From: Octopus bimaculoides
Taxonomy: Eukaryota
Direction of reading: 5' to 3'
Length of the DNA stretch: 37,943 nt
NCBI RefSeq assembly: GCF_001194135.2
Contig: NC_068983.1
Location: 43,923,117-43,961,059 of the forward strand
Positions 13,874 to 35,130 of this stretch are shown piece by piece. The first letter of the stretch is position 1, and each line of letters begins with the position of its first letter. The notes below the pieces were generated by a model. The model worked only from the letters and a program-made list of their open reading frames with translations. It searched no databases and was not told the DNA's origin. A program made the translations under genes and the position numbers.

Positions 13874-15882
13874 TTATAAGATTCTTTCCATATAAATGGC
13901 AAAATATAATGTGCCTTTCTTATCTGAATATCCAGTAATTAGTCTTGGGAAAAAACTGTCCTTCAAGTACCCGTCGGCAATGATATCTTCAAGCTGCGAC
14001 ATCTCAACATTACTTTTGAATGTGCCTTGTCTGGAAAGGTCTTTCCTGAAAATGACTGAAAATCTTGGTCTTTTATACTTGCTGGAAGTGTCCAAGTATG
14101 TCATAACACGGTGTGCCTTAGCATTTGAGACAACACTCTCAGTCAGTTCCTTCAGGGAAATATCTATGTATTCTTTGTAGTCTTTCACAGGTTTCTTTTC
14201 CAAAATGAAACACACTTGTGGTTCTTGATCAATGTGGACAAAACTCTGGACTCTTGGAACAAAACCCTTCTCATTATAAACTTGAGCAAACAATTTGTAA
14301 CATTGAGAATATTGTCGAATTCCAAATCGAATATCAACAGGTTCCTCTTTCACCGTATCAAATAGTGCCACATATCTGTTTTTGTCTGTGTGTGAGAAAC
14401 TGATATAACTCTGTAATAAAGACAGATATACATTTTTCTTGGAATAAATATGTTTGAAGTGGAGTAAACTCTTCTCATCAAGCCCATGCTCCAGATAGTA
14501 AGAACTAAGGCTTTCATCTGGGTTTACTTTAGAGATAACAGAAAAATAAGATTCTCTATTATACTCAAAAGCATTTATCCATTCAATTTTGAAGTATTGG
14601 TCTTTAATAGCATTGACATATGCTGAAATATGGTGTTCAGACAACTTGTATTTAATAATTTGTTCGTTAACTCCTACGTGCCCTACCCGAACATCGGCCA
14701 AATCATAAGAGAAGTAATTAGCACCATTTTGTGACCAATCTGTGAAATAATTCATGAAGTTTCGAATTGGTAATGGTTTATTGTGACCACCAACTAATAG
14801 CATAACAAATGTCTCTGAAGACATATATGAGGAATTACCTGGATTCTGAACTGTTTGTAAGAAGTTCCGGTGGCACAACAGCATACCATCAATTATGCCA
14901 TCTCCTTCCAGACAAACTTGACCATTTTTGTTCACATTTAGGTTAGCACCAACCCATAAGCCTGTAGCTTTCATTTTTCTTGGTTTTGCCAAGAGATTTT
15001 TGATGGAAGATTTTTTAAGTAACTGATGTGTACCAGTATGATCCAAGCATCGAAAAAAGCGCATAATATCATAAACATTGGTATACCAGCCATCAGTGAG
15101 AGAGACCACCTCCCTCTCTAGGTGTAGAGAATAAGTTGTATTAAAGTTTCCGACCAAGCTACGTTTAACCATATTCTTTATCCTGTTTTCTTTCATATGT
15201 TTTCCAAATCTTGTATGCCACATTCCACAAGGTTCCAAAATATTTTTCCTTACAAATGTTGGATAATCATAATTTTGAACTTTCTCAATAATTTGGTCCA
15301 GAATTACATAACCAAGATGAGAATGAACTGATTTTGTCCCTGGTTTAAAATTCAGTGGAATCGACATCATATATCTGAAAATATCCTTCAGTTCAGCAGT
15401 GTTCTTTAACTGCATGATGGAAGTGATGTTTGGAATGCGATAACCATTCTTTAAGTAAATAGAATTCAGAACTGGATCAAACATTGGTGGCATAGCTGAA
15501 TCCCAGCCACCAGCATGCCGAAGAAGGTCATCGACTGTAATGTCATACAGCCTGTTGTCAGTTCGAAAAATGCTCCAAGGTCGTAAGTGATTCAAAATTC
15601 CAAACTTACCAAAGACTTTAGCGGTAAGGTTCACTTTACCATTTTCAACAAGTTTAAGAACAGATACAGCAGTGAGCAATTTAGAAATATTTGAAGCTGG
15701 AAACAAGACTTCTGGTGTCATTTTAACATTATTCTGTGTACTGCCATAGCCATGGGTGTATAAAAGTTTTCCTTGGCGCATCAAAGCAACAGATGCACCT
15801 CGATATTGGAATTGCTTTAAAAATTTCTGGAAAGATTTGTCAAAACCTGCATTGTTCTCAAGACTTGGTCTTCCTTTGATTC
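13874..15882 (-). CDS. Terminal coding exon of a beta-lactamase/transpeptidase-fold (S12/PF00144-like) protein with five C-terminal BTRD1/polyglycine-hydrolase-like repeats; probably catalytically degenerate; 5' exon(s) not located
   Basis: 636-aa ORF in the track. It extends in frame 98 nt upstream (IKGRPSLENNAGFDKSFQKFLKQFQYRGASVAL) to a polypyrimidine+AG acceptor (ttttctccttag|GA ATC). Fold landmarks: GASVALMRQGKLLYTHGYG, LFPASNISKLLTAVSVLKLVENGKV, ITVDDLLRHAGGWD, PLNFKPGTKSVHSHLGY, ILEPCGM, GWYTNVYDIMRF. C-terminal repeats such as EHGLDEKSL...LQSY...RYVALF. Confidence 0.9.
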
Positions 15883-15900
15883 CTAAGGAGAAAATGAAAC
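15883..15900 (-). other. 3' splice acceptor (phase-1 intron) of the lactamase-like gene
   Basis: Minus strand reads gtttcattttctccttag|GA; AG at 15884-15883; AT-rich intron-like sequence upstream. Confidence 0.8.
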
Positions 15901-17134
15901 AAAAATATATTGATTAGAATAACAATATTTTGATTAAATTTTATAAATTAAAACCTAAAGAATTGTTATAAATTCAGAACATGCTAGTTGGAAATATAGT
16001 GACTATACATTTAAAAGTTTGTTGGTTTAACTACACAATGGAATTGTTGAAAACAGTACATGTACATCCAAAAAATGAATAACATTAAACGCACACATAT
16101 ACATAAGAAATTAAATAAATGACAAGGGAAGAAGGAATTATGTCATGAACTTCGTTGGCTTACAGCTGTTTCTGCTACAAAATGCAATGCACTCATAGTT
16201 GAGTACTTGTGTATCACCCTATAGCTTCAATGGAGCTTTAGACACTTTGTTCTGAAGCATATGTATATTGAGTTCTAACACCAGGTTATTGGTAATCACC
16301 ATGCCTAAGCAAAATAATATATAATATATAGAAAACGAAGAGTTCAAACAAAACAAAATCAATTTATTTGCATAATAGTCAATTTCATAACACCTACACA
16401 CGTTTGAATATCTATATTCATATTTTACAATTAAAAATTGTGTTATGAATTTAGAAGTCTGTAGCGAACACTACATCTATTAGGATGTAAATGAATATGT
16501 CAATTTTTGCCCTGAAGAGATTTTTACCTTCTAAATTCATAATGCAATTTTTAATTGTAAAATATGAATGAAGGTGGATATTGAAACACATGCAGGCATT
16601 ATGAAATTGACTATTATGTAAATAAATTGATTTTGCTGGGTTTAAACTCTCCATTTTCTTTAAATTATATTACCAAAATTCTGTTGTTATATCGTATGGA
16701 TGCAAACATTTATAAATTAATCGATATAGAAATAAACCAGTGGACACTTGGATGTAAGACATCCTTAGAAAGATTGATTTCTTTCTATACAAAACTTTAT
16801 AAATATATTTACACACACATACCAATGTTCAATATCATCTTCATCATTTTAAGGTCTATTTTTCCATGCTTGTAAGGGTTAAACAGATTTTACTGTAGTA
16901 GATTTTCTGTGGTCAGATGCATGCCATCCTGTTGCCAATTCTTACCTGTTTCCAAGTAGGGTAATATTTTCCCATGCCTCAACACATATTAAGCAAATAT
17001 TGGAAATGAAAGACACTACTTGTATGACACTGACACTCATTTACAACTATTATGCAATGTCAAGACAGGAGTGGACAAACAAAACACACACACACACACA
17101 CACACGTATGTGTGTCTCTTTCTATTTTTTAATT

Positions 17135-17560
17135 ATTATAAATCTTCCACTGAGAAGGGAGCTGGTTTCCAACAAAGATACAAGGCTCCATCTTTGAGAT
17201 GTAGTTAACACAGACAAATTCACATTTGGAACTTGAGAAAAGTCTTGCATATTTTTACTGTTCCACTCACAGATTGGACTTGTACAAACCAGCTGGTCGA
17301 TTTCTCTTTCTGAAAATCCCAGTTCATCCAGAGTCTCCTTTAAGCATTTGCTAACAAAACCTACTACTCCAATTATTATTGATATGAATATGAATTCATA
17401 GTCTGGATATAGAAGCTGGAGGTTTTGAAGCAGTTGTCCATAGCTATCCTCTTTTTCTTTGATTTTCAAAGAGATATTTATATCTGCAGGGCAGCTGACC
17501 TCTATGATGGTACATACCTTTGCCCCTCTGTCCCAAACAACAATATCTGGCCTGTTATGA
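17135..17560 (-). mobile_element. RLE-type LINE 3' fragment (second subfamily)
   Basis: HNRPDIVVWDRGAKVCTIIEVSCPADINISLKIKEKEDSYGQLLQNLQLLYPDYEFIFISIIIGVVGFVSKCLKETL; PD...E...K endonuclease motif. Confidence 0.8.
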
Positions 17561-17582
17561 AGTTTTGATATATGTATGTATG

Positions 17583-17722
17583 CAGACGATGGGTTTCTTT
17601 CAACTTCTGTCTACTGAATCCACTCACAAGGCTTTGGTAGGACTAGAGCTATGTTAGTCCAAGTTGCCAGGCAATGGGATTGAACCCAAAACCATGAAGC
17701 TGGAAAGCAAACTTCTTAAACT
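17583..17722 (-). mobile_element. SINE family A, degenerate head
   Basis: Reverse complement of head/centre (cactcacaaggctttggt, gggattgaacccaaaaccatg). Confidence 0.65.
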
Positions 17723-18162
17723 AAACAGCTGCTCCTGCGCATCTATCTATCTATCTGTGTGTGTGTGTGTGTGTATGTACCCAATACTTTCCACATCTAA
17801 AAGACAACATAACATACTAGTTGAAAATGGCAATTATACACCTAAAAACTCTCTGCTTCTAAATACATAACACCCAAGCTTAAAATGGTACTTAGACATC
17901 TAAAGATGTATTTGTGTTAAGGATTAGTTCTGTACAAAAGAACACAGATAAATGGCTTCCTACTGTTTCTACAGATGTAATGTTGACATATAAAAGTGGT
18001 GAACCAAGATATTTCACTTTTAAATGTTTTACAGAGAAGCAAGAAAGTATATTTGCCTAGGTTCAATCAGTGTAAAACTTGTTCCTTAAATAAAGCATGA
18101 GCTAAAGTCTCCGAATGATATAAGTAAACACAAACACATACACACTAGCAACATATATAAAT

Positions 18163-18357
18163 CCACAACTGCTTCAAAACCTCCAGCTTCTATATCCAGA
18201 CTATGAATTCATATGTATACCAATAATAATTGGAGCACTAGGTTTTGTTAGTAAATGCTTAAAGGAGACTCTGGATAAACTGGGATTTTCAGAAAGAGAA
18301 ATCAACCAGCTGGTTTGTACATTACAAGTCCAATCTGTGAGTGGAACAATAAAAATA
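18163..18357 (+). mobile_element. RLE-type LINE fragment, inverted relative to 17245-17440
   Basis: caactgcttcaaaacctccagcttctatatccagactatgaattc...gtccaatctgtgagtggaaca; QLLQNLQLLYPDYEFICIPIIIGALGFVSKCLKETLDKLGFSEREINQLVCTLQVQSVSGT. Confidence 0.8.
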
Positions 18358-18462
18358 TATATTACACACAAACAGGTGCAGGCAAAGCTGTGTGGTAAGA
18401 GGTTTGCTTCCTAACCACATTGTCTCAGGTTCAAACTCATCTCACTATGTGGCATCTCATAC

Positions 18463-18790
18463 TATCATCATCATCGTCGTTGTTTAACGTCTGCTTTCCA
18501 TTTTCCATGCTGGCATAGGTTGGACAGTTTGACTGAGGACTGGCAAGCCAGTAGGCTGCACCAGGCTCCAATCTGATCTGGCAAGGTTTCTAGAGCTGGA
18601 TACCCTTCCTAATGCCAACCACTCTGAGAGTGTAGTGGGTGCTTTTTACATGCCACCGGAACAGGAGCCAGTCAGGCAGCACTGGCACTGGCCACACTCA
18701 AATGGTGCTCTGTATGTGCCAGTCATGTGGTACGGGCATTGACCATGCTCGAATGGTGCTTTTTACATGCCAGTCAGGCAGCACTGGCAT
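18463..18790 (-). mobile_element. RTE-LINE 3' UTR copy
   Basis: (CAT)n tail, core, tandem units. Confidence 0.85.
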
Positions 18791-18811
18791 CAGTGTATGT
18801 ATGTACATAGG

Positions 18812-19162
18812 CACTGGAGTGGCTATGTGGTAAGAAGCTTGCTTCCCAACCACATGGTTTGGGGTTCAGTCCCACTGCGTGTCTTCTACTATAGCCTTAG
18901 GCTGATCAAAGCCTTGTGAGTGGATTTGGTAGATGGAAACTGAAAGAAGCCTGTCGTATATATGTGTGTGTGTGTGTGTGTATGTGTGTGTGTGTGTGTG
19001 TATGTATTTCTGTGTGTGTTTACATCCCTGTATCTTTGCAGTTCGGCAAAAGAGGCCGATGGAATAAGTACTAGGCTTACAAAGAATAAGTCCTGAGGTT
19101 GATTTGCTCGACTAAAGGCAGTGCTCCAGCATGGCCACAGTCAAATGACTGGAACAAATAAA
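18812..19162 (+). mobile_element. SINE family A, near full length
   Basis: ggagtggctatgtggtaag head, centre, (TG)n, tail ...gtgctccagcatggccacagtcaaatgactggaacaaataaa. Confidence 0.85.
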
Positions 19163-19490
19163 NNNNNNNNNNNNNNNNNNNNNNNNNNNNNNNNNNNNNN
19201 NNNNNNNNNNNNNNNNNNNNNNNNNNNNNNNNNNNNNNNNNNNNNNNNNNNNNNNNNNNNNNNNNNNNNNNNNNNNNNNNNNNNNNNNNNNNNNNNNNNN
19301 NNNNNNNNNNNNNNNNNNNNNNNNNNNNNNNNNNNNNNNNNNNNNNNNNNNNNNNNNNNNNNNNNNNNNNNNNNNNNNNNNNNNNNNNNNNNNNNNNNNN
19401 NNNNNNNNNNNNNNNNNNNNNNNNNNNNNNNNNNNNNNNNNNNNNNNNNNNNNNNNNNNNNNNNNNNNNNNNNNNNNNNNNNNNNNNNNN

Positions 19491-19830
19491 GATCACGGTT
19501 TCAATTCCCAGACTGGACGTTGTGAGTGTTTATTGAGCGAAAACACCTAAAAGCTCTACGAGGCTCCGGCAGGGGATGGTGGTGAACCCTGCTGTACTCA
19601 TCCACCACAACTTTCTCTCACTCTTACTTCCTGTTTCTGTTGTGCCTGTAATTCAAACGGTCAGCCTTGTCACACTGTGTCACGCTGAATATCCCTGAGA
19701 ACTACGTTAAGGGTGCACGTGTCTGTGGAGTGCTCAGCCACTTGCACGTTAATTTCACGAGCAGGCTGTTCCGTTGATCGGATCAACTGGAACCCTCGAC
19801 GTCGTAAGTGACGGAGTGCCAGCAACAACA
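19491..19830 (+). mobile_element. tRNA-derived SINE family D (5' end in gap)
   Basis: ggtttcaattccc B-box-like; tail ...gcaggctgttccgttgatcggatcaactggaaccctcgacgtcgtaag.gacggagtgcc + (CAA)n; near-identical to 36739-37018. Confidence 0.8.
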
Positions 19831-20049
19831 TGTGTGCATGTGTGTGATTTTGTATCCCTGATTACATTCGTGGTCATTTGTACAAAGCGTAGCAGGCATT
19901 GTTGTTAATTTTGTCAACAACTTGTTGAAGCCATGTGGAGTAAGAGATCTCTTACTTGGAAAACAGAGGAGGGTTTGTGACAGGAAGGGCATTTGGCAGT
20001 GAATCAATGCTTTAAATAACATATTTATCTGACATATGCAAGCATGGGA

Positions 20050-20390
20050 AAACAAAGCCCGAAATTTTTCAGGGGGAGGGCCAGTCAATTTGATCTACTC
20101 CAGTACGCAACTGGTACTTAATTTATCGATCCCGAAAGGTGTGTGTATATATAATATAAACCCTCACGTGCACACCTGCAAACTAGCTACAGCCAAACAA
20201 AAGTTTTTCATCATGCGCACACGCACCTCAACAAATTTCTAATTTCATCACTGGTACTGGTAAATAAAGCCAGGGCACCTCTTGGCATTAGTCGACCTCG
20301 GCGGAATCTGAATTCAGAATGTAAAGACAGTCGAAATACCACTAAGCATTTCGCCCAGCATGCTAACTTTTCTGCCAGCTCACCGCCTTG
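20050..20390 (-). mobile_element. SINE family C fragments
   Basis: gcaactggtacttaatttatcgatcccgaaagg and gtcgacctcggcggaatctgaattcagaa...ccagctcaccgcctt. Confidence 0.7.
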
Positions 20391-20540
20391 AGTGAATATA
20401 CATTATGTATGTGACAGAAAGAGCATCCAGCCATAGAAAAGTAGCCTCAACAAATTCTGTCCAGCACGTGCAAGAAAAGAAAAAATAGACATTAAGTAAT
20501 GGGAATATGTGTATGCCTGTGAGTGTCTATACACATACAT

Positions 20541-20575
<35 letters not shown>

Positions 20576-21189
20576 TATTTCCACCTGTAAATATATTTGT
20601 ACACATTCATAAACACTCTCACCTATATAAACTGAACACACACAATACAGGGTTATATACACACACATATTACACCTGAACTCTATAACTTGTTTACTCA
20701 CAATTCTATCTGTCTACATGAATAAAAGCACCAGACTACACGCCTCACATCATTATGATCACCACCACCACCACCACCACCATCACAACTACACTACCTC
20801 TCTTCACCCTTATCTCTCTATCAGATAGATTAACAAGAGGGGAAAGTGACTGAAAAGAAAGGGGAGTGAAGGTCTTCTATAAAACTACTATTACTCCTCC
20901 TCCTCCTCCTCCTCTTTCTTCCCCCTCCTCCTATTGACCTCTGTTACTACACAAACACCCAGCTGTTTTAATAATGCCACTGGTTGACACTTGTCAGCAA
21001 CACCTTCTTCCTAAACCTGTGTATAATTAATTAAAGCACACAGGCTGAAAGGTTTGGTCAGGTGGCAGGTGGCTGGTTGTTCTAAAGGTGAAGAAAATGG
21101 GTTTGATTCCATTTGGCAGCATACAAAATATTGGTGTCTTTTTGTTTTTTGTTTTTTCAACATGTTTTATCATCACAGTAACCATTATT

Positions 21190-21275
21190 GATGATGACAA
21201 TAAGGACAGCGATGACAATGATACAGATAACAATGACAATGATAAGGACGATGATGATGACGACGATGATGACAG
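21190..21275. repeat. Degenerate (GAT/GAC/AAT)n trinucleotide tract
   Basis: gatgatgacaataaggacagcgatgac...; source of spurious poly-Asp/Ser ORFs. Confidence 0.8.
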
Positions 21276-21639
21276 CGACATCACTGTTCTCAGCATCACC
21301 ACAAACCACATCCACTGCTATCTCAAAACAGGACAACAACCACAGCCCAGCTCAATGCATACCAAGTCATTTTTCAGGGACAGTCTTAACATTTCACCAC
21401 CTTCTTTAACTGCTCACCCACCCCCAAATGACCCTTGGGTACCCTTAATAGAGTCCACCCTGTTGCAAACATTTGGGTCAGGTGTCTAGATTTGCAATAA
21501 CTTCCCCACTTACTCTCCAGATCAAATTATAAGAAAGTAAATCTTTAATCTATCATTTTTTGGGGGGGTTCAGTCATAGGAATGCAGCCATGCTGGAGTA
21601 CCACCTTAAAGGGTGTAGTCAAATAAATTGCTATTGTTG

Positions 21640-21950
21640 TTGTTGTTGTTTGTTCCTTCTTGAGCCATGCTTGGCTCATAAGGGTCGGTTTCCCGGTTTC
21701 ATTGGTGTTTAGGCTCTCCACCTGGATGGGACACCAGTCCATTGTGGGTGAGTTGTTGGATGCAGGAGGAAAGAGTGAGAGAAAGTTGTGGCAAAAGAGT
21801 CAGCAGAAGTTCACCATTACCTTCTGCCAGAGCCGTGTGGATCTTATGTGTTTTGCTCATAAACACACACATATCGCCCAGTCAGAGATTCGAACCCGCA
21901 ATCCCTTGACTGCAAGTCCGCTGCTCTAACCACTAGGCCATGTGCCACTA
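21640..21950 (-). mobile_element. Full-length tRNA-derived SINE (family-D-like head, different tail, (CAA)n end)
   Basis: Minus strand tggcctagtggttagagc (A box), ggttcgaatc (B box), ccacaactttctctcactc centre, tail gaaaccgggaaaccg...aaacaacaacaac. Confidence 0.8.
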
Positions 21951-21954
21951 CTAG

Positions 21955-22250
21955 TTGAATAAATTGATTCCAGTATCTGTTTTTTATGTCTGGTACCTAT
22001 CAGTCTCTTTTGCTGAACTGCTAAGTTACAGAGATATAAAGAAACCAAAACCGGTTGTCAAGCAGCGTGGGAGGGGCAATACAAACTCAAGGGAACTCAC
22101 ACACATGATGAGCTTCCTTACAGTTTCCATCAACCAGATTCACTCACAAGGTACTGGTTAGCCTAGAGCTACACTAGAAGATGCTTGTCCAAGGTGGCTT
22201 ACAATGGGACTGAAACTGAAACCATGGGTTTGCAAAGCAAGCTCCTAACT
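21955..22250 (-). mobile_element. SINE family A, degenerate
   Basis: Reverse complement of tail, centre and head. Confidence 0.7.
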
Positions 22251-22786
22251 TGATGCCCATAAAAAATAAGGTGGGGGGCTGCTAATTTGTTGAGACCTTG
22301 ACAAATATTTTGAAGATTAACTCAGAAAACCATTGAAAACAGCTAAACAAGGAGTAAAGATAATCTCCTTAGGAATGTCACTAATCTCACCGCCACCCCC
22401 ACTCCTTCTCCTTCGTCCACATTCCACACATTATACAATATCATTCCTGAGAAGAAAGTCTCCCAGTGGCACCTGTATGATGGACTTACACACACATATA
22501 CTGACATGTATACATAAAAATATAGCCATAAATATGCACACACACGCATACACACACACATATATATATATGTACATGCATATGTGTATGCATGTATGTA
22601 AGTATACATATACATATATATCTTTTGCATACATACAACATGTCTGTGTCTACATATATATATATATATATATATATANNNNNNNNNNCCATAAATATGC
22701 ACACACACGCATACACACACACATATATATATACAAGCACAGACATGCACATGCGTGTGCACACACACATACACACAGATATATTG

Positions 22787-23017
22787 AAGGCGGTGAGCTT
22801 GCAGAAGCGTTAGCACGCCGGGCGAAATGCTTAGTGGTATTTCGTCTGTCTTTACGTTCCGAGTTCAAATTCCGCCGAGGTCGACTTTGCCTTTCATCCT
22901 TTCGGGGTCGATAAATCAAGTACCAGTTACGCACTGGGGTCGATGTAATCGACTTAATCCCTTTGTCTGTTCTTGTTTGTCCCCTGTGTTTAGCCCCTTG
23001 TGGGCAATAAAGAAATA
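22787..23017 (+). mobile_element. SINE family C, full length, little diverged
   Basis: aaggcggtgagcttgcagaa head, gagttcaaattcc B box, ctttcatcctttcggggtcgataaa.aagtacc centre. Confidence 0.85.
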
Positions 23018-23618
23018 ACAGATGTATGTGTGTATATGTATGCATGTATGAGTGAGTGAGTAAGTGAGTGAGTGAGTGAATGAGCATGTGTGTGTGTGTG
23101 TGTGTGTGTGTTTGTGTGTGTATGCACGCATGCATGTATTTGAGATTTATTTCAGATTTTCTTTTTCAGAATTGAAGCTGGTGACTAACAAAGTGAGAAG
23201 GAAAGTCTTTTGTTTAAGTGAAGACAGCTCTTGGGGGTTTGTGGATACCTGATCTGGTTAGTGTGTGCATTTATGTATATGAATGTGAACATGTATGCGT
23301 GTATGTGTGGCTAAACTTGCATTCATGTAATGAACATGCATGACTCCTTAGTATACAAGTATGTGTGTGAGTCATTACACATTCTGTGTAGGTGAATAAG
23401 CTATAGTGATGTGCAAGTGTGAGCAAAATTTAATCCTAGCAAACTCAAACAAAGAATCCCTGGAATGTTTTAATAATTGTCTTGGTATCACTAATTAATT
23501 ATTTCGAGAATGCAAATCAGTTTGCTTCGTTTGGTGGACAAAGTTACGAAGTAAAAATATTTTTTTACTTTACTTTCCATCAAGAATCTCTTTCTAGTTA
23601 ATGCTCTTGTAGTTAATT

Positions 23619-23962
23619 TTTACTCTTTTACTTGTTTCAGTCATTTGACTGCGGCCATGCTGGAGCACCACCTTTAGTCAAGCAAATCGACCCCAAGACT
23701 TATTCTTTGTAAGCCTAGTACTTATTCCATCAGTCTCTTTTGCTGAACCGCTAAGTTACGGGGACGTAAACACACTGGCATCAGTTATCAAGCAATGTTG
23801 GGGGGGGGGGGACAAACACAGACACACAAACACATATATATATATACATATACACGACGGGCTTCTTTCAGTTTCCGTCTACCAAATCCACTTGCCCAAG
23901 GTGCCACACAGTGGGACTGAACCCGGAATCAGGTGGTTGGTAAGCAAGCTACTTACCACACA
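23619..23962 (-). mobile_element. SINE family A, full length
   Basis: ttttactcttttacttgtttcagtc tail through gggactgaaccc...acttaccacaca head. Confidence 0.85.
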
Positions 23963-24005
23963 AGATCATATACATGCTTGAGTGCGTGTATATATATATA
24001 TATAT

Positions 24006-24190
24006 TATCATCATCATTGTCATCGTTTAATGTCTGCTTTTCATGCTAGCATGGGTTGGACAGTTTGACTGAGGACTGGCAAGCCAGGAGGCTGCACCAA
24101 GCTCCAATCTGATCTGGCAAGGTTTCTATAGCTGGATGCCCTTCCTAACACCAACCACTTTGGGAGTGTAGTGGGTGCTTTTTACGTGCT
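24006..24190 (-). mobile_element. RTE-LINE 3' end
   Basis: (CAT)n tail and core. Confidence 0.85.
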
Positions 24191-24214
24191 ACTATATATA
24201 TAGTAACTATTATT

Positions 24215-24255
<41 letters not shown>

Positions 24256-24999
24256 NNNNNNNNNNTTTTTTTTTTTTTTCTTTCCAGAAATGTTGACATC
24301 GGATGGTAAATAATTGAATAAATGGAATATAAATCTGTCGAGTTCAAAGTCTCTATCCCTTTTAAATATACAAATATATATATACACACACTTTCTTAAT
24401 TGAAAATGAAACCTGAAACTGAGAGTTTGTCAAGCAACTTGAGCTTCATGCCACTGTGATCTTCAGGTGAGAACAGTGGTATGAAACTAGAGTTGTGAGA
24501 CAAACTCTGTTTCAGTTTCAATGAAAAGAAACCCATATCAACAATATCCCTTGAGCACTCTTCTCTCATTCATCCAACATAAACCAACATACACACACAC
24601 ACACACACATGTATGTGTGTGTATATAGACATGCAAACACACACATACACACACACACAAAATGTGTGTATTTTTGTTGATAAAACCCTGCACAAGGGTG
24701 AAAAAAATTGAGTAATAAATCAGTGTTGAACAAAAGAATCTTGTAATTAATCCAACTCAAGCACGCCCTTGTTATTGGATCCATTGGCAAAGCAGAAAAC
24801 CATTGCTCAATTTATGAGAAACATGAAACCAATGATGCCATTCTAAATTTAAATTCATGAAATGAAATAAAAAAAAAAAGAAGATAAAATTATTTTGTCT
24901 CAATGATAAATAAAATCTTGTCCATCACTTGCAATTGAGAATGACATTGTATACAGTGACATGCTTTCATTAAGTGTGTTTGAAGCATGTAATAATAAT

Positions 25000-25480
25000 G
25001 GTTTCAAATTTTGTCACAAGGCCAGCAATTTTGGGGCAGCAGTGCTGCCTGACTGGTACCCATGCTGGTGGCAGGTAAAAGGCACCATTGATGCCAGTAC
25101 TGCCTGACTAGCCCTCATGCCAGTGGCACGTAATAAGCACCCACTACAATCTTGGAGTGGTTAGTGTTAGGAAGGGCATCCAGCTCTAGAAACTCTGCCA
25201 GATTGGATTGGAGCCGGGTGCAGCCTTTTGGTTTGCCAGCCAAACCATCCAACCCATGCCAGCATAGAAAGCGGACATTAAGCGACAATGATGATAATGA
25301 TGATGAGGTAAGTTGATTACATCGACCTCAATGCTCAACTGGTACTTGTTTTATCAACCCCAAAAGGATGAAAGGCAAAGCCAGCCACAGCAGTATTTGA
25401 ACTCAGAATATAAGGATGGATGAAATGCTACTAAACATGGCACCCAGCATGCTAACAATTCTACCAGCTTACCATCTTAA
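25000..25480 (-). mobile_element. SINE family C interrupted by a + strand RTE 3' end (25041-25305)
   Basis: SINE segments ...aattttggggcag and ggtaagttgattacatcgacc are contiguous in the intact copy at 12290-12360. Confidence 0.7.
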
Positions 25481-25706
25481 GACCTATTGACCTGGGGCTT
25501 AGCAACGAAAACAACTATTATTACCATTAATGAGAGCACCTCTACTAGGATGCTCAGCTTGCTAGAAACAACAGCAAATGTCCTTTAAATTACACTCATT
25601 GTAAAAACCAAATGACTATGCTAAGATACACTTACATAGGGGGTAGAAAGATATGATAGATAGGTCTGTTCAGAGTTGACATGGAATTAAGCAACTACAA
25701 CACCCA
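25479..25706 (+). repeat. Dispersed ~230 bp direct repeat, copy 1 (copy 2 at 27130-27374)
   Basis: Shared ctctactagg.tgctcag..tgctagaaaca.cagcaaatgtcc...ataggtctgttcagagttgacatggaa.taa.caactacaacaccca. Confidence 0.75.
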
Positions 25707-25887
25707 GGTCATGCTGGAGCACCACCTTTAGTCGAATAAATCGACCCTAGGACTTATTCTTTGTAAGCCTAGTACTTATTCTATCAGTCTCATTTTGCCG
25801 TACCACTAAGTGACGGGGACGTAAACACACCAGCATCGGTTGTCAAGCGATGGTGGGAGGACAAACACAGACACAAACAACAAACAT

Positions 25888-25968
<81 letters not shown>

Positions 25969-26125
25969 CGACGGGTTTCATTCAGTTTCCGTCTACCAAA
26001 TCCACTCTCAAAGTTTTGGTCAGCTCGAGGCTATAGTAGAAGACACTTGCCCAAGGTGCCATGCAGTGGGGCTGAACCCGGAACCATGTGGTTGGGAAGC
26101 AAACTTCTTAGCACACAGTCACTCC
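25707..26125 (-). mobile_element. SINE family A with expanded internal (CA)n(TA)n
   Basis: Tail, microsatellite, centre and head all present. Confidence 0.85.
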
Positions 26126-26544
26126 TGCGCCTATGATAGGATTATTTTAAATGTCAAATGGCCATTTGAATAAAATAGCAATCAAAGGCTCCATAGGTTA
26201 TATGTAGTTGAGAATCACTGATCTAGTGGAACATTGAGGATGTGACAACAGGAGGGAAAGAGGGATGGCTGTACCAGTACTTATTTGGTATCTATTTTCA
26301 TCAGAGTGAACTGAAACAGCATGAAATAATATGTCCTGCTCAAAGACACAGTATACTGCCCAACCCAGGAATTAACCCTACGACCTTCTGATCAGCTGAA
26401 AATAAATACTAACAAACTACTGGTGCACCCTGCCCTCTCTCTCTCTCTCTCTCTCTCATTCTTGCTATCACATCCATGACGTTCTGCCAGATGACATGTG
26501 GGAGTGTCAAAAGAATTTTTGTCAATTCGTGACTCTAAAGTTGC

Positions 26545-26660
26545 AGGCGTGGTTCAAAACCACATGGTTTCAGATTGGGAAAGTATCTTCTACTATAACT
26601 CTGGGTCAACCAAAACCCTGTGAATGGATTTGGTAGACAGAAGCTGAAAGAAGCCCATCA
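26545..26660 (+). mobile_element. SINE family A, partial
   Basis: accacatggtttcag...gtatcttctactataac...ggatttggtagacagaagctgaaagaagccc. Confidence 0.65.
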
Positions 26661-26719
26661 TATCTATCTATCTGTCTTTCTGTTTCTGTCTCTTGATACA
26701 TAAGAAAATATATATGAGA

Positions 26720-27036
26720 AGAAGAGCCATCGAGCCGAGCAAAATCGCAGTCGTGACAGATACTGGTGTCATGCAAATTAGCACCCATGCTGGTGGCATG
26801 TAAATGTGCCCCAGTGTCACACAAATAGCACCCATACTGGTGGTATGTAAAAGCACCCATTACACTCTCAGAGTGGTTGGCATTAGGAAGGGCATCCAGC
26901 CGTAGAAAACCATGTCAAATCAGACTGGTGACTGGTGCAACCGCTCAGCTTACCAGCTCTGGTCAAACTGTCCAACCCATGCCAGCATGGACAACAGACG
27001 TTAAATGATAATGATGACGATGATGATGATGATGAT
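26720..27036 (+). mobile_element. RTE-LINE 3' end
   Basis: gagaagaagagccatcgagccgagcaaaatcgcagtcg, tandem units, core, (GAT)n. Confidence 0.8.
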
Positions 27037-27129
27037 ATATATACACACATGTATGTATGTGTGTGTGTATGTGCGCGCGTGTAATAAGTTACTGATGGAG
27101 CCATGAATTAAAATTGTACACTACTTTTG

Positions 27130-27374
27130 AAGACTATTGACTTGGGGCCAAGCAACACAAACAACTACTACTACCATTAAGGAGAGAGAGGGCCTCTACT
27201 AGGTTGCTCAGACTGCTAGAAACAGCAGCAAATGTCCTTCAAATTACAGTCATTGTAAAAAGCAAATGGCTATGCTATCTAAGATACACCTACATAGGGA
27301 GTGGTCATGGGTAGAATGATATGATAAATAGGTCTGTTCAGAGTTGACATGGAACTAAACAACTACAACACCCA
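27130..27374 (+). repeat. Dispersed direct repeat, copy 2
   Basis: See 25479-25706. Confidence 0.75.
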
Positions 27375-27919
27375 GAGTATTTACCTACCACCACTCCCTG
27401 TAAACACCTTATAACTACTGACAATACAATACATCGGTGAAATACCTTGATTGAATCCCTCAAGTATGTCCTACTACTCCCAAGAATGTCATCTAAAGCA
27501 TGCAGGATGAGTTCACACTCAATCTGCATGACTGAAAAACGCCTCCCACCTCTCTCTTTCCCTATCTATCTGTCTGTCTGTCAATCTATCTATCAATCTC
27601 CTGCCCTTTCGCTCTCTCTCTCTTTTACCCTCTCCAACAGGTGTAGCCCATATCAAATGCAGCTGAGGCTCCAGTTTTAATACTTTCCGCTGCGCAACAG
27701 GTCACGCGAGTCATTCTACACACATCACGTTTTTGCGTGTATGGGAGTATGTGCATGAGTGTGTATGTATGTATGTGCGTGTATTTAAAACACACACATA
27801 TTCATCAACTATGGTTTTACATTAAGTTAGGCAATTTCCAGTCTATTTAAAGATGTAGTAGAAAACTCACGCTATGTAGGTAAGAAGACATTTTCACACA
27901 CAGACATAGATATGAGTGT

Positions 27920-27987
<68 letters not shown>

Positions 27988-28112
27988 GTATAAACATATA
28001 GATAGATAGATAAGTGAGAAAACTGGAGTCAACAAGAAGGAGTACAACAGACAGAGAGAATGTTCTCAAACCCGAGGATTTTGAACTTATGAAGACAATA
28101 TTTACATAGGCA

Positions 28113-28440
28113 TAGGAGTGGCTGTGCGGTAAGTAGCTTGCTTACGAACCACATGGTTCTGGGTTCAGTCCCACTGCGTGGCACCTTGGGCAAGTGTCTT
28201 CAANNNNNNNNNNGTTCAGTCCCACTGCGTGGCACCTTGGGCAAGTGTCTTCAACTATAGCCTCGGGCCGACCAAAGCGTTGTGAGTGGATTTGGTAGAC
28301 GGAAACTCAATGATACATGTGTACATGTGTGTGTTTGTGTCCACCCTTGTCTTGACATCACGTAATGGTTGTAAACAAGCATCACCGTCATACAAGTGGT
28401 GTTTGTTCCCAGTCTTCCATGAAGAACATGCCTGGTCACA
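28113..28440 (+). mobile_element. SINE family A head joined to the alternative ((GAT)n-family) tail module
   Basis: ggagtggctgtgcggtaag head, then cttgtcttgacatcacgtaatggttgtaaac...catgcctggtca instead of the usual tail. Confidence 0.7.
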
Positions 28441-28760
28441 CAACTGGTACTTAATTTATTGACCCTGAAAGGATGAAAGGCAAAGTCAACCTTGGAGGAA
28501 TTTGAACTCAGAAGGTAAAGGCAGACAAAATACTGCTAAGCATTTTGCCCGGTATGCTAACGTTTCTGCCAGCTTGCTGCCTTTAAAATATTCTTTTCTA
28601 CTCTAGGCACAAGGCCCAAAATTTAGGGGGAGGGGGCCAGTCGATTAAATCGACCCCAGTACGCAACTGGTACTTAATTTACTGACCCTGAAATAATGAA
28701 AGATAAAGTCAACCTCGGTGGAATTTGAACTCAGAACGTTTCTGCCAGCTCGCTGCCTTT
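28441..28760 (-). mobile_element. Two tandem SINE family C copies
   Basis: Two caactggtacttaattta.tgaccctgaaa...gaatttgaactcagaa...ctgccagct.gctgcctt units. Confidence 0.8.
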
Positions 28761-29494
28761 TTCCAGGTTTGATATTACAACATTAACACCTTCTACTCTA
28801 CCTCATGTCAGTGACTGCTTACATGATCAGAATTTGATGGTAACACCCAACTTTAACTGGAGCTAGTAATAAAATAAACTAGCATAATTTTACTGTATAT
28901 ATTGAAATACTTTATGTTGATGTGTTCTATATTCTTTCTTTTTATGCTGTTTTTTTTCTCTTCTTTAGACAGGAAGAGAAGCTAAGAACATTGCCTTTTT
29001 CTATTGTTGCACATTAAATGTCAGTTTTTCAATGTATAATGCATCAAATAATTTAAATATTTCAATTTTCTGTGCATGAAGTTATTACCAATTTGGACTC
29101 TGTTCTCTGTCAACGCCCACGCCACCCAATTATACTAATTGTGTGTGTGTGTGTGTGTCTCTATACTATGTATGTATGTTTTGATATTATTTAAAATTCG
29201 TCTGTTTCCACTTCCTACTTTTTGTACAGCACATGTACAGAATTTAAGATGGATCTTGTTAGGGCCTGAAGTCAAGTCACATAATTTGACTAGTTTATAC
29301 ATATTCAAATGTAAGACAATGGTAAAAAAAATTTTTTTTTTAAAGGAAAGAATTTGTCTTTTTAATTTGAATTATAATGCAAACTTAAAATTATTTCTTT
29401 TCCATCCAGACCTCCTTCTGTGCAGATGTGTACTGGGGGGTTTTTATGATGATAAGATGATTATATACACTCAACTGACATTATTATCATAAAA

Positions 29495-29655
29495 GTAACA
29501 AGCTGGCGGAATCATTTCAAATTCCGCTGAAGTCAACTTTGCCCTTCCTCTTCTTGAGTTCGATAAAATGAGTACCAGCTGAGCACTGGAGGTCGATGTA
29601 ATTGACATACCCCCTCCCTTCAAGTTACTGGCCTTGTATCAAAATTTGAAACTGT
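29495..29655 (+). mobile_element. SINE family C, degenerate
   Basis: aagctggcggaatc...ttgcccttcctcttcttgagttcgataaaatgagtaccagctgagcactgg. Confidence 0.65.
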
Positions 29656-29829
29656 TATTATTATTATTATATATCTTAATCAGGACACTAAGGGCAGTGG
29701 ACTGGTGAAGTCATTAGAGAATTGGAAAGAAGATACCACTTAAAAGCTCCCAGTCCACACTGAAAATTGGTTGGTCATCGGGAGGGCATCCAGCTATAAA
29801 AACCTTGCCAAAACTGACCTTGGCTGTTC

Positions 29830-30050
29830 ATGTGCCACATAAAAAGCACTACTCACCTTGCCTGTGCTTGTGCTGCATAAAAAGCACTGAGTCCACTCTC
29901 CTTAGTGGTTGGTGTTAGGAAGGGCATCCAGCCGTAAAAATCCTGCTAAAACAGTCACAGAAGTCTGGTGCAGGCTTTGGCCTGGCCAACTCTTGTGGTA
30001 CCGTCCCACCCATGCCAGCATAGAAGGCGGATTTTAAACGATGATGATAT
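29830..30050 (+). mobile_element. RTE-LINE 3' end
   Basis: Core and gatgatgat tail. Confidence 0.75.
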
Positions 30051-30389
30051 TTGATGAATTTTGACACATACACACTCACAGAGTATTGATCAGCCCAGGA
30101 GCTTCTTAGGGAACCACAAACCCATATATACGTGTGTATGTGTGTGTGTGCAGCGCACACACATACACACAAACAAACACATGCATATATATATATATAT
30201 ATGGTAAAGTTGTCAAATATGTATACAAACAATAATCTCTGGTACAAACACAGAAGGGTCTACAGAGCCACAATATGGCTGACTCTCCAAACATCCACAA
30301 GAATTCTAAAGGATGGTAGTTTATTGTTTATAAAATATACCATAAAATGAAAATTGTCATCTAGAGAATCACAGCTTACCCCACTGGTT

Positions 30390-30700
30390 CATCAGCATCA
30401 TCATCATTTAACGTCCGTAGTCCATGCTAGCATGGGTTGGATGGTTTGACCACGGCTGGTAAGCTGGAAGGCTGCACCAGACTCCAGTCTGATTTGGCAT
30501 GGTTTTCTATGTCTGGATGTCCTTCCTGATGCCAACGACTCCGAGAGTATAATGGGTGCTTTTATGTGCCACTGGCACAGGTGCCATTTACATGACACCA
30601 ATATCTGCTCTGACTGCGATTTTACTTGGCTTGATGGGTCTTTTTCTCAAGCATGACATAATGCCAAAGATCTCAGTAATTGCCCCGTGAGGCCCAATGC
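30390..30700 (-). mobile_element. RTE-LINE 3' end including last ORF2 codons
   Basis: (CAT)n tail, core, then on the minus strand gcattgggcctcacgg...gcttgagaaaaagacc. Confidence 0.8.
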
Positions 30701-31396
30701 TCGAAAGAAACTCATAAACTAATACTTACTCTCCATATGTGGAATCCACAAATGTCTGCAAAATTTCTAAGGTGTGTTGTGTTATGTCTATGAAATATAT
30801 CATACAATGATAATTTATTCAGTTTCATTCATCTTAGTCATCACTTATGCAAATGATGGTTTATTTGTAAATTAGGTGGATGTAGCATGTTGTCTATGCA
30901 TGGTCCTATTTGTTTTGTACTGAAAATAATTGTTTTAACGTCCCCGTTTTCATGCTTGCATGAGTCAAATGGAATTTGTTGAGGCGAATTTTCTACAGCC
31001 AAACACCTTTCCTGTTGCTAACCTTCACCAGCTTAATTTAGTTCATCCTTAGTCGAAAGACACCTGTTGTTATGTCCTGTTAATTGCATTTGTATTTGTG
31101 TAACAATTCTCTGTTTTTTTTCTGTCCTTGTTTTCGTATGCATTCGCTGCTTTCGTCCAAGGAATCTAATGCTCTTATCTTAGTTTTTCCTTGGGCCTGG
31201 CCAGATTGGAGCAATCTCGAGTATAACCAGCCGAAATTGCAAAGATAATCTGGAACTCGACTGAGGATAGAAAACTCCGAATGACTCGTCCTTGTTTTCT
31301 TTGTATCATCCGTCTGGATGTTTTGCGTTCTTGTCACATTTTTGCTTTTTTTATATATAGAATATAGTGGCGTACGTACACTTTGGTCTCTTATAA

Positions 31397-31430
<34 letters not shown>

Positions 31431-31515
31431 CCTTCCCAAAACTGACCTCGCCTGAGCTTGGGCCATGTAAAAAGTTCTAAGTCCACTCTGTTGGGTGGTT
31501 GGCGTTAGGAAGTTA

Positions 31516-31818
31516 CAGCATCGGTTGTCAAGCGATGGTGGGGGGACAAACACAGACACACATACATATATGTATGGTTGATTTATGTATCTTTATGGAT
31601 ATATTTTATTACGTGTATGGTTGTATATAGATAGATAGATACATACATATAAACAGACAGACACACACACGACAGGCTTCTTTCAGTTCCCGTCCATCAA
31701 ATACTCTCATAAAAGCTTTGGTCGCCCCGAGGCAGTATTGGAAGACACTTGCCCAAGGTGCCATGCAGTGAAACTGGACCCAGTTGGGAAGCAACTTCCT
31801 ACGACATAGTCACGCCTA
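31516..31818 (-). mobile_element. SINE family A, partial
   Basis: gcatcggttgtcaagcgatggtggggggacaaac...caggcttctttcagtt...acacttgcccaaggtgcc. Confidence 0.75.
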
Positions 31819-33274: not shown

Positions 33275-33301
33275 ACTAGTCTTACTACCAGCGTTGCTCG
33301 G
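33275..33301 (-). mobile_element. Possible Helitron 3' terminus
   Basis: Minus strand ccgagcaacgctgg hairpin, 8 nt spacer, then CTAG|T; 5' end not identified. Confidence 0.35.
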
Positions 33302-33483
33302 TAACGTATTCACGGAATTGTTTGCCATTTTGTAGAATGGGAATTCACGGTACTAATGCATGTTTATATATACTTAGCCTAACTTCTGGACTTATTTAAT
33401 TGGAACTATCCTAACAATAGTAATCAATTTACATGAGTAGACGCCTTTTTTAAACAATTTTTATCCTGAAAATCACCTGTTAC

Positions 33484-34794: not shown

Positions 34795-34796
<2 letters not shown>

Positions 34797-34860: not shown

Positions 34861-34863
<3 letters not shown>

Positions 34864-35062: not shown

Positions 35063-35130
<68 letters not shown>

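What the first reader, a model, noticed from the sequence alone, without database searches (positions are those of the whole stretch)
13874..15882. Bacterial-type beta-lactamase fold plus BTRD1/polyglycine-hydrolase repeats in a cephalopod-like genome
Seen: 668 open codons with S12/PF00144-like landmarks followed by five repeats, embedded in animal repeats and preceded by a spliceosomal acceptor, so not contamination. Known (from memory): this two-domain combination occurs in bacteria and in fungal polyglycine hydrolases that cleave Gly-rich linkers of plant chitinases. Inference: a little-studied invertebrate family, possibly of horizontal origin, that could bind Gly-rich or chitin-associated matrix proteins or peptidoglycan-like peptides.
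Basis: partly seen in the sequence, partly recalled or inferred. Interest (0 to 1): 0.75.

Follow-up and report, generated by a model that had tools for sequence, protein, structure and literature searches.

The report
Catalytically dead secreted beta-lactamase-fold octopus protein
The window holds the main coding exon of an uncharacterised Octopus bimaculoides gene for a secreted protein that joins a beta-lactamase-type fold to a five-repeat barrel, as in fungal polyglycine hydrolases but in the opposite order. This copy has lost the catalytic serine and tyrosine yet is strongly conserved, so it most likely binds something rather than cutting it.

Summary
On the minus strand, 13874..15882 is one 2009-nt coding exon behind a real splice acceptor. 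It is 100% identical to residues 21-689 of Octopus bimaculoides LOC106876528.

- **Fold.** The N-terminal half is a PF00144 domain (E 1.3e-33).
- **Repeats.** The C-terminal half is five strand-helix-strand-strand repeats. They align end to end with bacterial BTRD1 x5 domains (hhalign 99.7%, E 1e-25). Their only solved structural match is the polyglycine hydrolase 7TPU.

The interpretation needs three corrections.

1. The domain order is reversed relative to polyglycine hydrolases and their bacterial relatives.
2. The family is not a recent gene transfer. Named members come from molluscs, annelids, brachiopods, echinoderms, a hemichordate and amphioxus. The tree broadly tracks the named groups, and the intron position is conserved in cephalopods.
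3. This copy is not a canonical enzyme. The nucleophile Ser is Asn85, and the Tyr-x-Asn motif is His207-Ser-His209.

A tandem paralogue 46 kb away keeps Ser/Lys/Tyr/Asn. The dead copy is still under strong purifying selection (dN/dS 0.10 against Argonauta).

Best reading: a secreted pseudoenzyme that acts as a binding protein, produced by a cephalopod-specific duplication of an old bilaterian gene. Its ligand is unknown.

The parts
15883..15900 (-). 3' end of intron 1: polypyrimidine tract and AG acceptor (…tttcattttctccttag)
   Evidence: Read directly. Usage follows from the 100% match of the NCBI protein across the junction.
15883..37943 (-). Part of the ~63-kb phase-1 intron 1. Exon 1, encoding the signal peptide, lies about 41 kb beyond the window end.
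   Evidence: Exon 1 was not found in the window. It was found at L001 10001-10061 with a GTAAGA donor; the window maps to L001 from position 51255.
13874..15882 (-). Exon 2, the last exon, of O. bimaculoides LOC106876528: residues 21-689 plus the TAA stop
   Evidence: It is the only copy in the window.
14729..15856 (-). Beta-lactamase / S12-type (PF00144) fold domain, residues ~30-405
   Evidence: Pfam E 1.3e-33. Foldseek matches 2qmi, 4gdn, ClbP, LACTB and AmpC at E 1e-15 to 1e-12. The family profile's best PDB hit is 7tpu, E 7.3e-24.
15689..15691 (-). Codon AAT = Asn85, at the position of the catalytic nucleophile Ser (Ser343 of 7TPU). It forms an N-I-S sequon.
   Evidence: Pairwise alignments to 2qmi and 7tpu, family alignment, codon.
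15680..15682 (-). Codon AAA = Lys88, the retained Lys of the SxxK motif
15317..15325 (-). CAT-TCT-CAT = His207-Ser208-His209, replacing the Tyr-x-Asn motif (Tyr447/Asn449 of 7TPU)
14525..14662 (-). Repeat 1 (residues 428-473), E-H-E-E
   Evidence: AF2 secondary structure; hhalign register with bacterial BTRD1 x5.
14357..14500 (-). Repeat 2 (residues 482-529), E-H-E-E
14195..14326 (-). Repeat 3 (residues ~540-583). Its first strand is weak or disordered in the model (pLDDT <50 at 534-547).
14042..14179 (-). Repeat 4 (residues 589-634), E-H-E-E
   Evidence: PF17660 hits the equivalent repeat in P0021 and weakly in P0006.
13880..14032 (-). Repeat 5 (residues 638-688), E-H-E-E
   Evidence: PF17660 hits the equivalent repeat in Mactra (E 2.6e-8) and Diadema (E 5.1e-7).

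Best explanation
The region is the large coding exon of Octopus bimaculoides LOC106876528, a two-exon gene for a secreted 689-residue protein.

**Architecture (shown).** After an inferred signal peptide comes a class-C-beta-lactamase / DD-peptidase (PF00144, MEROPS S12-type) fold. It is followed by a barrel of five strand-helix-strand-strand BTRD1 repeats. These are the same two modules as in polyglycine hydrolases, but in the opposite order.

**Origin (shown).** The gene belongs to an old bilaterian family. It arose by a cephalopod-specific duplication, and its tandem neighbour LOC106869730 keeps Ser-Lys-Tyr-Asn.

**Loss of catalysis (substitutions shown; inactivity inferred from the established acyl-enzyme mechanism of this fold).** In this copy the acylation nucleophile is Asn85, and the general-base motif Tyr-x-Asn is His207-Ser-His209. 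It cannot work as a canonical acyl-enzyme serine hydrolase.

**Function (constraint shown; mechanism inferred).** Both domains remain under strong purifying selection, and Asn85 and His207 are fixed in all four dead-type cephalopod sequences (P0001-P0004). The most likely mechanism is therefore non-catalytic. The former active-site cleft and/or the repeat barrel would bind an extracellular ligand, such as a peptide or protein related to the substrate of the active paralogue, without cleaving it. The protein would act as a receptor, decoy, scaffold or regulator. The ligand is unknown.
For: **Identity and gene model**
- 100% match to XP_014780597.1.
- Exon 1 and its donor located in L001; a 65-kb gene on chromosome CM046603.1.
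- The same two-exon, phase-1 structure in the paralogue and in both Argonauta orthologues.

**Fold**
- PF00144 at E 1.3e-33.
- AF2 model with pLDDT 81 and pTM 0.85.
- Foldseek to PBP/beta-lactamase-fold structures at E ~1e-15.

**Repeats**
- Five E-H-E-E units.
- hhalign against bacterial BTRD1 x5: 99.7%, E 1e-25, 253 columns.
- 7tpu is the only PDB hit at E<=1e-3 for the C-domain model (E 4.6e-6).
- PF17660 matches in 12 of 20 homologues.

**Dead catalytic site**
- Asn85, His207 and His209 align to Ser, Tyr and Asn of 2qmi and 7tpu.
- The paper on 7TPU labels Ser343, Lys346, Tyr447 and Asn449 as its two conserved beta-lactamase motifs and describes a catalytic nucleophilic serine shared with class C beta-lactamases (PMC9912923).
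- In the column table, only 17 of 45 animal members keep S-K-Y-N.

**Not decaying**
- dN/dS of O. bimaculoides against Argonauta is 0.096 overall, 0.099 in the lactamase domain and 0.092 in the repeats.
- Intact orthologues are annotated in O. vulgaris and O. sinensis.
- A dead-type relative in another cephalopod (P0003) occurs as a complete ORF in 76 short assemblies, one ending in poly(A).

**Duplication**
- The paralogue lies 46 kb downstream on the same strand.
- The cephalopod A+B clade has 100% bootstrap support.
Against: - Inactivity is inferred from sequence only; no assay was done.
- A Ser (Ser84) sits immediately before Asn85 and is conserved in most of the family. The new His residues could conceivably support other chemistry.
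- The third active-site motif could only be placed by alignment. It appears absent even in the paralogues that keep Ser/Tyr, so the active state of those copies is also unproven.
- No expression data for this exact locus were found.
- Secretion rests on reading the N-terminal sequence, not on a predictor or experiment.
- dS is high (1.2), so dN/dS is approximate.
- Monophyly of the four dead-type cephalopod sequences has only 49% bootstrap support. A single origin of the substitutions is likely but not shown.
- The repeat-domain TM-score to 7tpu is only 0.43.
Confidence: 0.6

Rival explanations
1. It is still an active hydrolase that uses a non-canonical catalytic arrangement. Candidates are Ser84 one residue upstream as nucleophile, with His207/His209 as base, or a metal site formed by the two histidines.
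For: Ser84 is conserved in most animal members, whereas bacteria have Ala there. Lys88 is retained. Asn85 and His207 are fixed rather than drifting in all four dead-type cephalopod sequences. Purifying selection on the lactamase domain is as strong as on the repeats.
Against: His209 is not conserved in the dead-type sequences: P0003 and P0004 have Ser. Other lineages replace the nucleophile with Gly, Ala, Asp or Glu and the Tyr with Val, Ile, Thr and others. This pattern fits repeated loss of catalysis, not a shared new mechanism. I know of no precedent in this fold for a nucleophile shifted by one residue (from memory).
Confidence: 0.1
2. The gene, or the family, entered cephalopods or molluscs by recent horizontal transfer from bacteria or fungi.
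For: Outside animals, the closest lactamase domains are bacterial. These are Gimesia (Planctomycetota) proteins carrying PF17660+PF00144 at 37-39% identity to the annelid-type member P0121 used as query, and metagenome or Thermomicrobiales proteins. The best PDB hit for the family profile is the fungal 7tpu. No ecdysozoan or vertebrate member appeared in the lists.
Against: Named full-length members come from Mollusca, Annelida, Brachiopoda, Echinodermata, Hemichordata and Cephalochordata. The tree recovers cephalopods, gastropods, bivalves and molluscs with 89-100% support. The spliceosomal intron position is conserved. The gene sits in a 168-Mb chromosome among animal repeats. The lactamase-then-repeats order was not seen in any bacterial protein inspected.
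Confidence: 0.03
3. It is a decaying duplicate (unitary pseudogene in progress) whose open frame is a leftover.
For: Two catalytic motifs are lost, while the neighbouring copy keeps them.
Against: The 669-codon frame is intact. dN/dS is 0.096 over dS 1.2 against Argonauta. Full-length orthologues are present in three Octopus species and Argonauta. Dead-type relatives are transcribed in another cephalopod.
Confidence: 0.02

Closest known systems
Fungal polyglycine hydrolases / chitinase-modifying proteins (Fvan-cmp, PDB 7TPU; Bz-cmp, Es-cmp)
   Same: The same two modules are present. One is a class-C-like beta-lactamase fold; 7tpu is the best PDB hit for the family profile (E 7.3e-24). The other is a barrel of five ~45-residue E-H-E-E repeats; 7tpu is the only PDB match to the C-domain model (E 4.6e-6). 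Both proteins are secreted. Both deviate from the classical third motif (PMC9912923).
   Different: The domain order is reversed: lactamase is N-terminal here. The motif residues labelled in Fvan-cmp (Ser343, Tyr447, Asn449) are Asn, His and His here. This is an animal gene with an intron, not a fungal one. There is no evidence for Gly-Gly cleavage or a chitinase target.
Bacterial BTRD1(x5)-beta-lactamase proteins (e.g. Gimesia 'serine hydrolase / penicillin-binding protein 4', P0281; P0141)
   Same: The repeat domains are homologous over all five repeats (hhalign 99.7%). Among non-animal lactamase domains these are some of the closest; P0141 scores 262 bits against the family profile. The Gimesia proteins are 37-39% identical to the annelid-type member P0121 over its lactamase half.
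   Different: Bacterial proteins have the repeats N-terminal and keep SxSK, YSN and H/K-x-G. The octopus protein has the opposite order and has lost Ser, Tyr and Asn.
Tandem paralogue LOC106869730 (O. bimaculoides) and its orthologues (O. vulgaris CAI9720375, Argonauta P0008)
   Same: Same architecture, length, two-exon structure and chromosome, 46 kb away on the same strand. 52% identical.
   Different: The paralogue keeps Ser-x-x-Lys and Tyr-Ser-Asn and has a lower dN/dS (0.054 against 0.096).
Other non-catalytic or divergent PF00144 proteins of animals (LACTB; oyster shell-matrix gigasin-6)
   Same: They share the PF00144 fold; LACTB structures are Foldseek hits. [quoted passage not shown]
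   Different: LACTB is mitochondrial, active and single-domain. The oyster member recovered here is LOC111134346; whether it is gigasin-6 was not checked.

Membership tests
PF00144 / S12-type beta-lactamase-DD-peptidase fold | Significant match to the family HMM and fold | tested here: met
   Pfam E 1.3e-33, 117 bits against a cut-off of 27. Foldseek E ~1e-15 to 2qmi, 4gdn, ClbP, LACTB and AmpC.
PF00144 / S12-type beta-lactamase-DD-peptidase fold | Motif 1, S-x-x-K: nucleophilic Ser | tested here: not met
   Asn85 (codon AAT, 15691-15689) aligns with the Ser of 2qmi and Ser343 of 7tpu. Lys88 is retained.
PF00144 / S12-type beta-lactamase-DD-peptidase fold | Motif 2, Y-x-N | tested here: not met
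   His207-Ser-His209 aligns with Y-L-N of 2qmi and Y447-S-N449 of 7tpu.
PF00144 / S12-type beta-lactamase-DD-peptidase fold | Motif 3, K/H-T/S-G on the beta-3 strand | tested here: inconclusive
   In the MAFFT alignment the bacterial KDG/KPG/HAG and the HTG of Lingula and Argonauta_C fall opposite E346-G-D. That region is loosely aligned and was not checked on coordinates.
Polyglycine hydrolase (fungal chitinase-modifying protein) | Five-repeat N-domain fold plus beta-lactamase-like domain in one chain | tested here: met
   Both modules are present.
Polyglycine hydrolase (fungal chitinase-modifying protein) | Domain order: repeats N-terminal, lactamase C-terminal | tested here: not met
   Here the lactamase domain is residues 30-405 and the repeats are 428-688. 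7TPU has the N-domain at 13-262 and the C-domain at 271-616 (PMC9912923).
Polyglycine hydrolase (fungal chitinase-modifying protein) | Catalytic Ser/Lys/Tyr/Asn | tested here: not met
   Only Lys is retained.
Polyglycine hydrolase (fungal chitinase-modifying protein) | Cleaves Gly-Gly bonds in the polyglycine linker of plant class IV chitinases | not testable with these tools
   This is a biochemical property. With the nucleophile absent it is not expected.
PF17660 BTRD1 repeat | Match to the Pfam repeat HMM | tested here: inconclusive
   The window protein has no hit at E<=1. Twelve of 20 homologues hit it, best E 2.6e-8, on repeats 5 and 4. The profile-profile match to bacterial BTRD1 x5 is 99.7%, E 1e-25.
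PF17660 BTRD1 repeat | Five E-H-E-E structural repeats forming a barrel-like domain | tested here: met
   AF2 models show 5 x E-H-E-E; the first strand of repeat 3 is weak. 7tpu is the unique Foldseek PDB hit, at E 4.6e-6 but TM only 0.43.

The most novel reading that the evidence does not exclude
The dead copy is a neofunctionalised sensor or decoy. After the cephalopod duplication, one copy of an ancient secreted peptidase was converted into a non-cleaving binder of the same ligand class. That ligand could be, for example, microbial cell-wall peptides or Gly-rich or chitin-associated matrix proteins. Asn85 and His207 were then fixed for binding, and Asn85 may carry a glycan because it lies in a conserved N-I-S sequon. 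The same enzyme-to-binder switch would have happened independently in heterodont bivalves, the annelid-type clade and amphioxus. This would make the family an unrecognised bilaterian set of recognition proteins, analogous to non-catalytic PGRPs or chitinase-like lectins.
Probability: 0.25. Interest if true: 0.65.

Novelty: new variant of a known kind. Interest (0 to 1): 0.45.

Why it matters
The five-repeat barrel of polyglycine hydrolases has no known function, and no paper in the searched library discusses it in animals. This locus shows three things.

- The lactamase-plus-barrel pairing exists in animals across six named bilaterian phyla, in the reverse order.
- Members lacking the nucleophile Ser keep both domains; in this cephalopod copy both domains are under strong purifying selection.
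- Octopuses carry a natural matched pair, Ser/Tyr-bearing and Ser/Tyr-less, side by side.

That pair is a ready-made experimental system. It could be used to ask what the barrel and the cleft bind, and how a peptidase fold becomes a binding protein.

The finding does not bear on antibiotic resistance. It is not evidence of recent gene transfer into cephalopods.

Tried and rejected
1. A direct Pfam scan of the window protein for PF17660 gave no hit at E<=1. The question was resolved through homologues and profile-profile comparison.
2. Pairwise global hhalign between the five repeat sub-alignments gave only weak signals. The best was R2-R4 at 67% probability; the rest were below 4%. The repeats are structural rather than sequence repeats, as reported for 7TPU.
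3. Exon 1 was searched for in the window in six frames and not found. It lies ~63 kb upstream of exon 2, outside the window.
4. Foldseek with the full-length model was dominated by the lactamase domain, and 7tpu was not in the top 50. A separate C-domain model was needed.
5. A Biopython BLOSUM bootstrap timed out and was replaced by a numpy Kimura-distance NJ analysis.
6. The Logan contig for P0059 was checked as possible RNA evidence. It proved to be unspliced genomic DNA of another Octopus, 91% identical.
7. Literature searches by LOC and XP identifiers of the octopus genes and of six homologues returned nothing. Searches for BTRD1/PF17660 returned nothing relevant to animals.
8. An SNF-transporter ORF lies next to P0003 in two assemblies. 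It has no counterpart in the flanks of the octopus or Argonauta loci, so it gives no synteny support.
9. Pfam on three other window ORFs gave nothing meaningful.
10. The weak PF13976, NCBP3 and Beta-lactamase2 hits fall below their cut-offs and were disregarded.
11. Contamination and pseudogene readings were rejected (see rivals).
Full report
**1. The observation**

- The open frame lies on the minus strand. Translation of 15883..13877 gives 669 sense codons, ending at TAA 13876-13874.
- Immediately upstream the sequence reads ...tttcattttctccttag|GAATC, so the exon begins at 15882.
- The product is 100% identical to residues 21-689 of XP_014780597.1, 'uncharacterized protein LOC106876528' of Octopus bimaculoides.
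- The first 20 residues (MDPLRKLSFWIVTLLTLGLS) are not encoded in the window. They lie in a 61-nt exon with a GTAAGA donor about 63 kb upstream in chromosome record CM046603.1.
- This N-terminus has a basic start and a 13-residue hydrophobic core, and reads as a signal peptide. That is an inference from sequence; no predictor was available.
- The surroundings contain microsatellites, assembly gaps and a dispersed SINE-like element with at least nine copies in both orientations. No second copy of the gene is in the window.

**2. The two domains**

- The N-terminal half matches PF00144 at E 1.3e-33.
- An AlphaFold2 model built on 20 family members has mean pLDDT 81 and pTM 0.85. By Foldseek it matches penicillin-binding-protein and class C beta-lactamase folds at E ~1e-15: Pab87 (2qmi), Flp (4gdn), ClbP, LACTB and AmpC.
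- A family profile searched against PDB sequences finds the fungal polyglycine hydrolase Fvan-cmp (7tpu) as its best hit, E 7.3e-24, through the lactamase domain.
- The C-terminal 260 residues fold in the models as five strand-helix-strand-strand units: 428-473, 482-529, ~540-583, 589-634 and 638-688. This is the E-H-E-E x5 description given for the Fvan-cmp N-domain (PMC9912923).
- PF17660 (BTRD1) does not hit the octopus protein directly. It does hit 12 of 20 homologues, on repeats 5 and 4.
- A 43-sequence profile of the animal C-domain aligns over 253 columns with bacterial BTRD1 x5 domains, all five repeats in register (hhalign 99.7%, E 1.1e-25). One of those bacterial proteins, P0141, matches PF17660 five times at E 2.5e-51.
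- A separate C-domain model has exactly one PDB match at E<=1e-3. It is 7tpu (E 4.6e-6), though TM is only 0.43.

**3.

- In 7TPU the repeats are N-terminal. The same is true of the bacterial relatives inspected: P0141, P0216, P0222, P0225, P0228 and P0230. The 689-residue Gimesia proteins carry PF17660+PF00144 and match through a lactamase-sized stretch only. In the animal family the repeats are C-terminal.
- None of the bacterial proteins inspected from the best 150 representative hits had the animal order. Their C-terminal extensions were TIG, Por_Secre_tail or InlB-type modules.
- The catalytic motifs are mutated. Pairwise alignments to 2qmi and 7tpu put Asn85 opposite the nucleophilic Ser, and His207-Ser-His209 opposite Tyr-x-Asn. 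Lys88 is kept (codons).
- The third motif appears to be E346-G-D where bacteria have K/H-x-G. That region is loosely aligned.

**4. Family, distribution and history**

- A full scan of 1.84 billion representative proteins returned about 25-30 clusters (50% identity level) with end-to-end matches.
- Named members are:
  - three Octopus species and Argonauta;
  - Crassostrea, Solemya, Mactra, Mya, Mercenaria and Dreissena;
  - Haliotis, Aplysia, Biomphalaria and Bulinus;
  - Capitella and Lamellibrachia;
  - Lingula;
  - Diadema, Patiria, Asterias, Antedon and Anneissia;
  - the hemichordate Glandiceps and Branchiostoma.
- An NJ tree with 200 bootstraps recovers cephalopods (100%), gastropods (97%), bivalves (89%), molluscs (95%) and the core family (99%).
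- All four cephalopod genes examined have the same structure: a short signal-peptide exon, a 37-63-kb phase-1 intron, then one large exon.
Only a pre-bilaterian transfer remains open.
- Cephalopods carry at least three paralogues:
  - type A is this gene, with Asn/His;
  - type B is LOC106869730, 46 kb downstream on the same strand, with Ser-Lys and Tyr-Ser-Asn intact;
  - type C is divergent (Argonauta 'LOC115210556', grouping with one Lingula protein) and keeps all three motifs including HTG.
- Catalytic residues have been lost repeatedly across the family:
  - Gly plus Val/Ile/Phe/Thr in heterodont bivalves;
  - Ala in some pteriomorph-like sequences;
  - Gly/Asp/Glu in the clade whose closest named relative is Capitella;
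  - Lys-to-Glu and Tyr-to-Leu in amphioxus.
- Only 17 of 45 animal sequences keep S-K-Y-N.

**5. Is the dead copy functional?**

- Against its Argonauta orthologue (78% identity), dN/dS is 0.096 at dS 1.2. The two domains are almost equal: 0.099 for the lactamase domain and 0.092 for the repeats.
- The type B pair gives 0.054. dS values are near saturation, so the ratios are approximate, but constraint is clear.
- Asn85 and His207 are identical in all four type-A sequences.
- The Ser-to-Asn change creates an N-I-S sequon that is also kept in all four.
- A type-A relative from another cephalopod (P0003) occurs as an uninterrupted 700-codon ORF in 76 short assemblies, one ending in poly(A). These are spliced mRNAs.
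- I found no expression data for this exact locus. The one Logan contig in its cluster is genomic.

**6. Mechanism**

- Shown: the architecture, the loss of Ser/Tyr/Asn, purifying selection, the tandem Ser/Tyr-bearing paralogue, and the bilaterian distribution.
- Inferred: the acyl-enzyme mechanism of this fold requires the Ser nucleophile and the Tyr base, so the protein is most likely a pseudoenzyme. It would act extracellularly by binding through the former cleft and/or the repeat barrel.
- The authors of the 7TPU paper suggest substrate positioning or protein-protein interaction as roles for the barrel.
- The ligand is unknown.
- Rivals are non-canonical catalysis via Ser84 or the histidines (about 0.1), recent horizontal transfer (about 0.03) and a decaying duplicate (about 0.02).

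**7. Comparison and novelty**

- The closest known systems are the fungal polyglycine hydrolases and the bacterial BTRD1-lactamase proteins.
- This protein shares both modules with them. It fails their membership tests on domain order and catalytic residues.
- The gene is annotated but uncharacterised, and no paper on the animal family was found in the searched library.
- I rate it a new variant of a known kind, of moderate interest. It is a solid, testable pseudoenzyme/enzyme pair in an unstudied bilaterian family, not a surprising transfer event.

Noticed in passing
window 15683-15691 (-), residues Asn85-Ile86-Ser87: The Ser-to-Asn substitution at the nucleophile position creates an N-X-S glycosylation sequon. 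It is conserved in all four dead-type cephalopod sequences and absent from all other members. In a secreted protein a glycan could sit in the former active site.
   Followed up: partly
outside the window: CM046603.1 ~43,851,979-43,891,144 (L002): The tandem paralogue LOC106869730 lies 46 kb downstream on the same strand with Ser/Lys/Tyr/Asn intact. In O. vulgaris the three protein accessions CAI9720374, CAI9720375 and CAI9720376 are consecutive, suggesting a local cluster with two type-B copies.
   Followed up: partly
P0146 (Argonauta 'LOC115210556') and P0145 (Lingula LOC106172838): A third, older paralogue class has the same lactamase-then-repeats layout but keeps all three catalytic motifs (SxSK, YxN, HTG). 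The Argonauta model has no obvious signal peptide. These sequences sit closer to the bacterial ones in the tree.
   Followed up: partly
window 888-957, 2089-2192, 3688-3757, 5028-5231, 7491-7694, 25109-25306, 26926-27029, 29959-30062, 34503-34606: A dispersed SINE-like element of about 100-200 nt. Its conserved core is ...CCCATGCCAGCATGGAAA.CGGACGTTAAACGATGATGATGA followed by a GAT/AAT microsatellite tail. It has at least 9 copies, plus inverted copies.
   Followed up: no
window 3295-3509, 6749-6888, 18667-18790: Short tandem arrays with 51-67-nt units sharing the motif GCCAGTCAGG.GGCACTGGCA..ACCACACTC, present in both orientations. They probably belong to another interspersed repeat family.
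   Followed up: no
window 12416-12850 (+): A 144-codon ORF about 1 kb downstream of the gene's stop codon contains ...KILWDFPIQTDKKLENKRPDITVIDKEKQSYLLIDPS.... From memory this resembles the C-terminal tail of invertebrate retroelement ORFs. Pfam gave no hit, so this is untested.
   Followed up: partly
window 3608-3617, 4279-4624, 9156-9165, 10608-11545, 19163-19490, 22679-22688, 24256-24265, 28204-28213, 35131-35767, 36354-36738: Ten assembly gaps total 2684 N, mostly flanked by TA/TG microsatellites. They inflate several spurious 'ORFs' in the mechanical ORF list.
   Followed up: yes
L006 1142-3064 (-) and L007 315-2237 (-): In two independent short-read assemblies of another cephalopod, a 640-residue SNF-family transporter ORF lies head to head, about 550 nt from the start codon of the dead-type homologue P0003. 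No counterpart was found in the octopus or Argonauta flanks that were fetched. This may reflect overlapping divergent transcripts or an assembly chimera.
   Followed up: partly
L001, L002, L003, L004: The single intron sits at the same phase-1 position after the signal peptide in all four cephalopod genes. It is very large (about 37-63 kb), while the remaining ~2 kb of coding sequence is uninterrupted.
   Followed up: yes
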